From Dendrobates tinctorius (Eukaryota), in assembly GCF_039654945.1 (NCBI RefSeq), contig NW_027361725.1, positions 14,632,001-14,696,000 on the forward strand: 64,000 bases of DNA. The letters are read 5' to 3'. Positions 43,473-44,075 of this stretch are shown here, in pieces. Below the pieces are notes generated by a model. It was not told the origin of the DNA. It searched no databases and saw only the letters and a list, made by a program, of their open reading frames with translations. The translations under genes were made by a program, and so were the position numbers. Position 1 is the first letter of the stretch. Each line of letters begins with the position of its first letter.

Positions 43473-43546
43473 GAGGATAACACACACTTTTTTTTTTTTT
43501 TTTCTTCTTCAGAAAAAAAAAACAAAACTGAAAGGGTCAGTTATAA

Positions 43547-44075
43547 TGTCAGAGACACCGCACTACACTTGCTCATAGAGCCAGTGCGCGTGTCCTGAGT
43601 ACAGAAGCAGTGCTAAACGAGGTACAGGAGGAATAAACAGACGGGAGGTCAGACAAAGCCAAAGGTCATACACAGGATCACAGTACAGTACCAGGGATGA
43701 GACAAAGCGGATAATCAGGGCCAAGCAGAGATCAAAACCAAACAGACATAGGAGGTACCAGGCAGAATCCAAAGCGATATCCAGGAAACAGACCGAGTCA
43801 TACACAGAGAATCAAGTAACCAGAACACAGCACAAACACACTCAGGGGTCACCACACAATGCCAAGGGCAAGAGTATAACTGACAGGGATGGGAGCGTCC
43901 TGAGGCTATAAGAAGCCTCCCCCAGAACCAGGGAGAGGCCACAATCATAGCCCCAGGTGTGCAGGTAAGCCTGCATCGGGATCACAACCTTTAACCCCAG
44001 AAATGCCAGTCATCAGCACTGGTTCCAAACATTAACCCCACGTGTGCGAGTCAAACCCGCACTGAGATCATGACA
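43547..44075 (-). repeat. 5' LTR of Gypsy element 2
   Basis: Direct repeat of 38461-38989. Confidence 0.95.

What the first reader, a model, noticed from the sequence alone, without database searches (positions are those of the whole stretch)
43536..43912. Gypsy element 2: same self-priming geometry with a different sequence
Seen: 1 nt after the 5' LTR lies TATAACTGAC (43545-43536), the exact complement of GTCAGTTATA in the LTR (43884-43875). That LTR sequence starts about 27 nt after CTTATAG (43912-43906). There is no tRNA-type PBS. Inference: two families with unrelated LTRs keep the same 10-bp pairing, 1-nt offset and TATA spacing, which amounts to natural covariation supporting self-priming.
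Basis: partly seen in the sequence, partly recalled or inferred. Interest (0 to 1): 0.7.

Follow-up and report, generated by a model that had tools for sequence, protein, structure and literature searches.

The report
Self-priming site of a frog-type retrotransposon
A degraded gypsy-type jumping gene carries, right after its left repeat, ten letters that pair with the predicted start of its own RNA; this is the primer-free copying trick already known from yeast Tf1 and its vertebrate relatives.

Summary
Element 2 is a full-length Ty3/gypsy chromovirus on the minus strand. It has 529-bp LTRs (44075-43547 and 38989-38461) and a 5-bp target duplication, AGCAG. One nucleotide after the 5' LTR, TATAACTGAC (43545-43536) is the exact complement of GTCAGTTATA (43884-43875). 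That LTR segment begins 26 nt after the first T of TATA. Chance gives such a match at offsets 0-5 in 74 of 100,000 LTR shuffles.

I fetched ten related families from frog genomes and fish-type loci. All 12 families, counting the two in the window, share one geometry. The LTR ends in CA (TA in one), 0-2 spacer nt follow, then a 9-12 nt PBS that pairs with the element's own LTR. The paired LTR segment always starts with G, has T at -1 in 11 of 12, and lies 27-31 nt after an AT-rich box. The paired letters differ between families, so this is real covariation.

The self-priming reading is well supported, but the transcript start could not be mapped because no raw RNA reads were available. The mechanism is not new: self-priming defines the Tf1/sushi group and has been inferred from fungi to vertebrates. 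This is a new member of a known kind. First readers of this scan noted the same signature on two other pieces of this genome; those notes are unchecked.

The parts
43547..44075 (-). 5' LTR of element 2 (529 bp, TGTCA...TGACA)
   Evidence: LTR-to-LTR alignment; repeat family D7; ends printed
38461..38989 (-). 3' LTR of element 2, about 98.5% identical to the 5' LTR
44076..44080 (-). Target-site duplication AGCAG, 5' copy
   Evidence: flanks printed
38456..38460 (-). Target-site duplication AGCAG, 3' copy
   Evidence: flanks printed
43906..43912 (-). TATA-like box CTTATAG. The AT run starts 27 nt before the predicted start.
   Evidence: An AT-rich box lies at the same distance (27-31 nt) in all 12 families.
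43875..43884 (-). Predicted self-primer GTCAGTTATA, taken as the first 10 nt of the transcript (start of R). G43884 is the predicted +1 and T43885 is at -1.
   Evidence: Exact complement of the PBS. No variant at 10% or more is listed inside it across copies in four runs, while 43870, 43872, 43885, 43891 and 43897 vary (12 rows were not shown).
38789..38798 (-). The same 10-mer in the 3' LTR
43546..43546 (-). 1-nt spacer (T) between the LTR end and the PBS
43536..43545 (-). Primer-binding site TATAACTGAC, self-complementary type, no TGG
43549..43598 (-). Strong hairpin at the 3' end of U5, just before the PBS (-26 kcal/mol, z about -2.9)
   Evidence: A comparable hairpin is present in L009 (z -3.8) and L008 (z -2.2), but not in the other families.
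38993..39002 (-). Polypurine tract GAGAGGGGGG, followed by TAC and the 3' LTR
   Evidence: A similar G-rich tract ending G-TAC, or a near variant, precedes the 3' LTR in element 1 and most relatives.
39001..43487 (-). Coding region in four ORF pieces. 43487-43179: no Pfam family found. 43168-41795: gag, zinc knuckle, protease. 41760-40270: RT, RNase H, integrase zinc domain. 40185-39001: integrase core, Tf2-1-like SH3, chromodomain.
31093..31895 (-). Element 1 comparison: 5' LTR 31895-31104, spacer G31103, PBS AATCACCCGC 31102-31093, self-primer GCGGGTGATT 31732-31723

Best explanation
Element 2 is a Ty3/gypsy chromovirus of the Tf1/sushi kind that starts reverse transcription without a tRNA.

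Inferred mechanism:
1. RNA polymerase II starts at G43884, 26 nt after the first T of the TATA box.
2. The first 10 nt of the RNA fold back over R-U5 (about 340 nt) and pair with the PBS, which lies 1 nt after U5.
3. The element's RNase H cuts after nt 10.
4. The freed 3'-OH is extended through the spacer, U5 and R to give minus-strand strong-stop DNA.
5. That DNA transfers to the 3' R, as in any LTR element.

If the primer stays attached, plus-strand synthesis re-copies the PBS from it. That would explain why every family keeps a perfect match while the letters drift.

What is shown: the anatomy, the statistics, and the covariation across 12 families. What is inferred: the start site, the cleavage and the priming itself. 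This particular copy has a broken coding region, so the site is a record of its last replication cycle, not proof of present activity.
For: - The 10-bp complement sits at offset 1. Chance frequency is 7.4e-4 for any LTR position and offsets 0-5.
- The minimum-free-energy fold of 43884-43520 closes on exactly this duplex.
- The gene set is gag, protease, RT, RNase H, integrase, SH3_Tf2-1 and chromodomain. Ty3 is the closest solved structure.
- The target duplication is 5 bp.
- All 12 families share the same geometry with different letters.
- In those families the duplex is 9-12 bp and +1 is always G. Position -1 is T in 11 of 12, and an AT box lies 27-31 nt upstream. Each duplex position from 2 to 9 shows 3-5 pair types. 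Cross-family swaps pair over 2.5 nt on average.
- Close family pairs show double compensated changes. Element 2 versus L009 has primer GTCAGTTATA/GCCAGTTATT with PBS TATAACTGAC/AATAACTGGC. L002 versus L004 shows the same kind of change.
- A non-chromovirus gypsy in L001 has no such match at offsets 0-2. It carries a TGG-initiated PBS-like stretch instead.
- Published basis. In Tf1 the first 11 bases pair with the PBS and RNase H cuts between bases 11 and 12 (PMC7175516). Self-priming has been implicated from fungi to vertebrates (PMC4600332). A published detection rule asks for 10 bp or more starting 0-5 bp after the 5' LTR (PMC6317226).
Against: - The transcript start is not mapped. All public runs found were assembled contigs, none is on record as RNA, and the contigs show no ends.
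- The PBS itself was not covered by the laid contigs because the adjacent A/T-rich leader was skipped as repeat. Conservation of the PBS among copies of this very family is therefore untested.
- The overall fold of the leader is no more stable than shuffles (z = 0.02), and the centroid structure lacks the duplex.
- Complements of 9-11 nt to the LTR also occur by chance 0-5 times within the next 1000 nt of each element. The argument therefore rests on position and recurrence, not on the match alone.
- No biochemical evidence exists for any vertebrate element in the literature I could read.
Confidence: 0.85

Rival explanations
1. Reverse transcription is primed by a cellular RNA (a tRNA, tRNA half or other small RNA), and the match to the LTR is incidental.
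For: Most LTR elements use tRNAs, and half-tRNA primers exist (PMC6317226). I had no tRNA set for the host. ARAGORN found no tRNA gene in the window or the nine loci, so a direct complement test was not possible.
Against: There is no TGG at offsets 0-5. The 12 families have 12 different PBS sequences, each matching its own LTR at the same promoter-proximal place. That would require a different cellular primer per family plus 12 coincidences.
Confidence: 0.03
2. The pairing is real and selected, but it serves as a long-range 5'-leader structure (packaging, dimerisation or translation control), and priming happens by another route.
For: The minimum-free-energy fold closes the whole R-U5 domain with this duplex. 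No experiment has tested priming.
Against: The duplex sits exactly where a PBS must be: 0-2 nt after the terminal CA, with the primer's 3' end facing U5. No alternative PBS is present. The same layout is the experimentally proven primer in Tf1 (PMC7175516). One strand always begins at a TATA-spaced T/G initiator site, which a purely structural stem would not need.
Confidence: 0.07
3. Chance complementarity in a T/G-rich LTR.
For: Matches of 9-11 nt to the LTR occur elsewhere in the first 1000 nt of internal sequence.
Against: The frequency is 7.4e-4 for this element and 2.4e-3 for element 1, before any constraint on promoter distance. The match recurs in 12 of 12 families at offsets 0-2.
Confidence: 0.01

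Closest known systems
Tf1 and Tf2 of Schizosaccharomyces pombe (founders of self-primed reverse transcription)
   Same: Ty3/gypsy order of domains with a chromodomain integrase. The PBS next to the 5' LTR is complementary to the first bases of the element's own mRNA. There is no tRNA primer. The duplex is about 10-11 bp (PMC7175516, PMC5341516). From my memory of the Tf1 literature, Tf1 also makes a 5-bp target duplication.
   Different: The host is an animal. The duplex is 10 bp here (9-12 across the surveyed families) against 11 in Tf1. R-U5 is longer (about 340 nt). Nothing here has been tested biochemically. The U5 stem-loop that Tf1 requires has a possible counterpart only in element 2 and two of its relatives.
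Vertebrate Tf1/sushi group (sushi-ichi of pufferfish and relatives; Butler et al. 2001, J Mol Evol 52:260, cited in PMC4600332 and PMC6317226)
   Same: Vertebrate chromoviruses for which self-priming was already inferred from PBS-LTR complementarity. The fish loci L005 and L006 in my survey show the same layout as the frog elements.
   Different: I could not read that paper, so I cannot say whether these frog families were described there. The frog LTRs lack the AATAAA near the LTR end that the fish families have (the Sushi LTR model is described in PMC3601003).
Tj1 of S. japonicus and the Tcn1 clade of fungi and non-seed plants
   Same: Self-priming inferred in the same way, from a segment of the 5' LTR complementary to the sequence just after it (PMC4600332, PMC6317226).
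   Different: Different hosts and distant pol sequences. Tj1 activity has been shown in a transposition assay; this element's has not.
tRNA-primed Ty3/gypsy elements and retroviruses
   Same: LTR-PBS-gag-pol-PPT-LTR plan, a 1-2 nt spacer after the terminal CA, and a purine tract before the 3' LTR.
   Different: Their PBS begins with TGG and matches a tRNA 3' end. The non-chromovirus gypsy in L001 carries such a TGG stretch; element 2 does not.

Membership tests
Tf1/sushi-type self-priming chromoviruses | Ty3/gypsy domain order gag-PR-RT-RNase H-IN | tested here: met
   Pfam hits along the four ORF pieces in that order. Ty3 Gag-Pol is the best solved match.
Tf1/sushi-type self-priming chromoviruses | [quoted passage not shown] | tested here: met
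   PF00385 at residues 333-381 of the last ORF piece, E = 1e-9, after SH3_Tf2-1. HP1/CBX chromodomains match in the PDB.
Tf1/sushi-type self-priming chromoviruses | A stretch of 10 nt or more, starting 0-5 nt after the 5' LTR, complementary to the 5' LTR (rule used in PMC6317226) | tested here: met
   10 nt at offset 1; 74 of 100,000 shuffles reach this.
Tf1/sushi-type self-priming chromoviruses | No PBS of the tRNA 3'-end type | tested here: met
   No TGG in the 12 nt after the LTR. A full tRNA comparison was not possible because no tRNA genes are in the data.
Tf1/sushi-type self-priming chromoviruses | The complementary segment is the very 5' end of the transcript | not testable with these tools
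   Only contigs were available, no raw RNA reads. Indirect support in 12 of 12 families: an AT box 27-31 nt upstream and G at +1; T at -1 in 11 of 12.
Tf1/sushi-type self-priming chromoviruses | RNase H cleavage after the primer, and extension from it | not testable with these tools
   This needs biochemistry.
Tf1/sushi-type self-priming chromoviruses | RT/IN phylogeny places the element inside the Tf1/sushi clade | tested here: inconclusive
   No reference sequences of Tf1, sushi or other gypsy clades were at hand for a tree. Indirect support: the Tf2-1-like SH3 domain, and a 55%-identical fish relative that NCBI names 'Transposon Tf2-9 polyprotein'.
tRNA-primed LTR retrotransposons | PBS complementary to the 3' end (..CCA) of a host tRNA, next to the 5' LTR | tested here: not met
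   The sequence after the LTR is T then TATAACTGAC then CC, with no TGG. The PBS differs in every related family and follows that family's own LTR.

The most novel reading that the evidence does not exclude
Across frog and fish chromoviruses the self-primer obeys a strict rule. It starts at a T/G initiator about 30 nt after an AT box, is 9-12 nt long, and is separated from the terminal CA by 0-2 nt. Its letters turn over freely because the PBS is re-copied from the primer in each cycle. If so, the start site and the R boundary of any such element could be read from DNA alone. The rate of primer/PBS turnover would then be a direct record of replication cycles.

A further open point is that the six frog families checked lack any AATAAA-type signal in R-U5. 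That could mean 3'-end formation differs from the fish sushi elements.
Probability: 0.3. Interest if true: 0.4.

Novelty: new member of a known kind. Interest (0 to 1): 0.25.

Why it matters
It confirms from sequence alone, with real covariation across 12 families, that the primer-free way of starting reverse transcription found in fission yeast is the rule in frog and fish chromoviruses. In practice it gives annotators a simple test for the PBS and the likely transcript start in these very abundant elements. It does not open a new question, because the mechanism and its presence in vertebrates are already in the literature.

Tried and rejected
1. Mapping the transcript start. Laying four of them showed that the LTR family is very high-copy and present in a second species label. 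It gave no molecule ends, and the PBS was not covered because 43400-43535 was skipped as repeat.
2. A conserved U5 stem-loop like that of Tf1. It is present in element 2, L009 and L008 but absent in the other families, so I do not claim it as a family feature.
3. Overall stability of the leader RNA is no better than shuffles.
4. tRNA complement test. No tRNA genes were found in the window or the loci.
5. The original Tf1 and vertebrate papers could not be read: Levin 1995; Lin and Levin 1997 and 1998; Atwood-Moore 2006; Butler 2001; Esnault and Levin 2015. What I say about them rests on how open papers cite them and, where marked, on memory.
6. LTR homology between families. BLAST finds none except between the two fish-type families.
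7. A poly(A) signal to fix the R/U5 border. None was found in the frog families.

Full report
**What is there**

Read on the minus strand, the finding lies in the 5' end of a complete LTR retrotransposon. Aligning the two ends and printing the junctions gives the following anatomy:
- The LTRs are 529 bp, at 44075-43547 and 38989-38461. They run TGTCA...TGACA and are about 98.5% identical.
- The element is flanked by the 5-bp direct repeat AGCAG.
- A purine tract GAGAGGGGGG plus TAC precedes the 3' LTR.
- Between the LTRs lie four ORF pieces. Their Pfam content runs in this order: gag, zinc knuckle, aspartic protease, RT, RNase H, integrase zinc domain, integrase core, Tf2-1-like SH3, chromodomain.
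- Ty3 Gag-Pol is the closest solved structure, and the C-terminus matches HP1-type chromodomains.

It is therefore a Ty3/gypsy chromovirus whose reading frame is now interrupted in at least three places. I describe the breaks only by the ORF limits and did not read through them.

**The observation**

After the last A of the LTR (43547) comes T43546 and then TATAACTGAC (43545-43536). Its exact reverse complement, GTCAGTTATA, is in the LTR at 43884-43875. That is 26 nt after the first T of TATA (43910) inside CTTATAG.
- The pairing is exactly 10 bp, with mismatches on both sides.
- The 10-mer occurs three times in the window: both LTRs and the PBS. Shuffles expect 0.13.
- In 100,000 dinucleotide-preserving shuffles of the LTR, a complement of 10 nt or more starting 0-5 nt after the LTR appeared 74 times. 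For element 1 the figure was 244.
- No TGG follows the LTR, so there is no PBS of the tRNA type.

G31103 is followed by AATCACCCGC, which pairs with GCGGGTGATT at 31732-31723, 30 nt after ATTTAA.

**Comparative test**

The RT-RNase H piece finds thousands of relatives. The closest are in frogs, followed by fishes. I fetched the DNA around nine of them. In each I located full elements by tblastn and LTR pairs by blastn, then read the junctions.

Counting the two window elements, there are 12 families:
- three in Phyllobates terribilis;
- one each in Lithobates pipiens, Aquarana catesbeiana, Pseudophryne corroboree, Rhinoderma darwinii and Eleutherodactylus coqui;
- one in Labeo rohita;
- one in an unnamed assembly (L006).

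RT identity to element 2 is 53-68%. The LTRs show no BLAST similarity to one another, except between the two fish-type families.

Every family has the same plan:
- The LTR ends in CA (TA in one family).
- 0-2 spacer nt follow.
- A 9-12 nt PBS then pairs with the family's own LTR, with at most one G-U pair.
- The paired LTR segment begins with G in 12 of 12 families.
- It has T at -1 in 11 of 12.
- It starts 27-31 nt after the start of an AT-rich box such as TATTTAA.

Duplex position 1 is always G-C. Positions 2-9 each show three to five different pair types. Primers and PBSs swapped between families pair, from +1, over 2.5 nt on average, against 9-12 nt for the true partners.

Close pairs of families differ by compensated double changes. 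Element 2 versus the Eleutherodactylus family has primer GTCAGTTATA against GCCAGTTATT, with PBS TATAACTGAC against AATAACTGGC. The Lithobates and Aquarana families differ in the same way.

A non-chromovirus gypsy element in L001 served as a control. It has no such match at offsets 0-2 and instead carries a TGG-initiated stretch four nt after its LTR. From memory this stretch looks like a tRNA-Ser 3' end, but I did not test that.

**Limits of the evidence**

- The start site is predicted, not mapped. The single run search returned only assembled contigs, none on record as RNA.
- Laying four runs shows that the LTR is a very abundant family. Within the LTR no variant at 10% or more is listed inside 43875-43884, while 43870, 43872, 43885, 43891 and 43897 vary. 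However, 12 rows were not shown.
- The PBS itself was not covered, because the A/T-rich leader next to it was skipped as repeat.
- The minimum-free-energy fold of 43884-43520 closes on the 10-bp duplex. The leader as a whole is no more stable than shuffles, and the centroid structure lacks the duplex.
- Complements of 9-11 nt to the LTR also occur by chance 0-5 times in the next 1000 nt of each element. The case therefore rests on position and recurrence.
- A strong hairpin at the end of U5 (43598-43549, z about -2.9) recurs in two relatives but not in the rest.

**Mechanism**

The best reading is Tf1-type self-priming:
1. Transcription starts at G43884.
2. The first 10 nt fold back onto the PBS.
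3. The element's RNase H cuts after nt 10.
4. The 3'-OH is extended through the spacer, U5 and R.

For Tf1 this is established: the first 11 bases pair with the PBS and RNase H cuts between bases 11 and 12 (PMC7175516; see also PMC5341516).

By analogy with tRNA-primed elements, and from my memory of work showing that the Tf1 primer is not removed, plus-strand synthesis copies the primer and so rewrites the PBS in each cycle. That would explain perfect matches with free turnover of the letters. It makes the covariation a footprint of the mechanism itself, not only of selection. This step is inference.

Rivals and my weights:
- A cellular RNA primer: 0.03.
- A purely structural stem: 0.07.
- Chance: 0.01.

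**Comparison with what is known**

[quoted passage not shown] 2001 on vertebrate Tf1/sushi elements). A plant-wide survey treats it as common to Tf1/sushi elements and detects it with the very rule met here: 10 bp or more starting 0-5 bp after the 5' LTR (PMC6317226). PMC3601003 notes that some chromoviruses use hairpin priming.

I could not read the original papers. I therefore cannot say whether these frog families were already described.

Clade membership by phylogeny was not tested, for lack of reference sequences. Membership by anatomy is met. The two functional criteria, the start site and the cleavage, are untestable with these tools.

**Verdict**

The phenomenon is a new member of a known kind, of modest interest. 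First readers of this scan noted the same signature for element 1 of this window and on two other pieces of the same genome. I tested only the element 1 note.

**Handling**

This is a provirus-like element of an animal genome. I only compared and described copies. The functional assay that would need a working element is referred.

Noticed in passing
L002:17860-28899, L003:10671-22754, L007:7225-20262, L009:10865-21699: In four of the nine fetched loci the chromoviruses form tandem arrays that share LTRs (LTR-internal-LTR-internal-LTR). The NCBI gene models that led me there are chained across several element copies.
   Followed up: partly
L007 (reverse strand) 1-4026 and 9439-10077: The Phyllobates element closest to element 2 (RT 68% identical) sits inside at least 4 kb of a satellite with a 50-bp period. 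The satellite flanks both of its LTRs.
   Followed up: no
window 43480-43525 and about 31020-31050: Both window elements carry a long A run followed by GTGT in the leader between the PBS and gag. Element 2 also has a T run before it. The function is unknown. This tract caused the read tool to skip 43400-43535.
   Followed up: no
R-U5 of six frog-family LTRs (window 43547-43884, 31104-31732, and loci L001-L004): None of 11 common poly(A)-signal hexamers occurs downstream of the predicted start in the six frog families checked. The two fish-type families have AATAAA about 50 nt before the LTR end. In A-poor LTRs this absence may be chance.
   Followed up: partly
window 43549-43598; L009 and L008 LTR ends: There is a strong hairpin at the very end of U5, just before the PBS, in element 2 and two relatives (z -2.2 to -3.8) but not in the other families. 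It is a possible counterpart of the U5 stem-loop that Tf1 needs.
   Followed up: partly
window 3485-4222, 17541-18584, 33394-34066, 62338-63202: Four tandem-repeat arrays with periods of about 124, 31, 41 and 81/86 bp.
   Followed up: no
L001 (reverse strand) 77868-85729: A non-chromovirus gypsy element has 972-bp identical LTRs. A TGG-initiated 18-nt stretch lies 4 nt after the 5' LTR. From memory it resembles the 3' end of a tRNA-Ser. I used it only as a negative control.
   Followed up: partly
window 26119-31895: Element 1 has LTRs that differ at one position in 792. Its coding region is nevertheless split into four ORF pieces.
   Followed up: no
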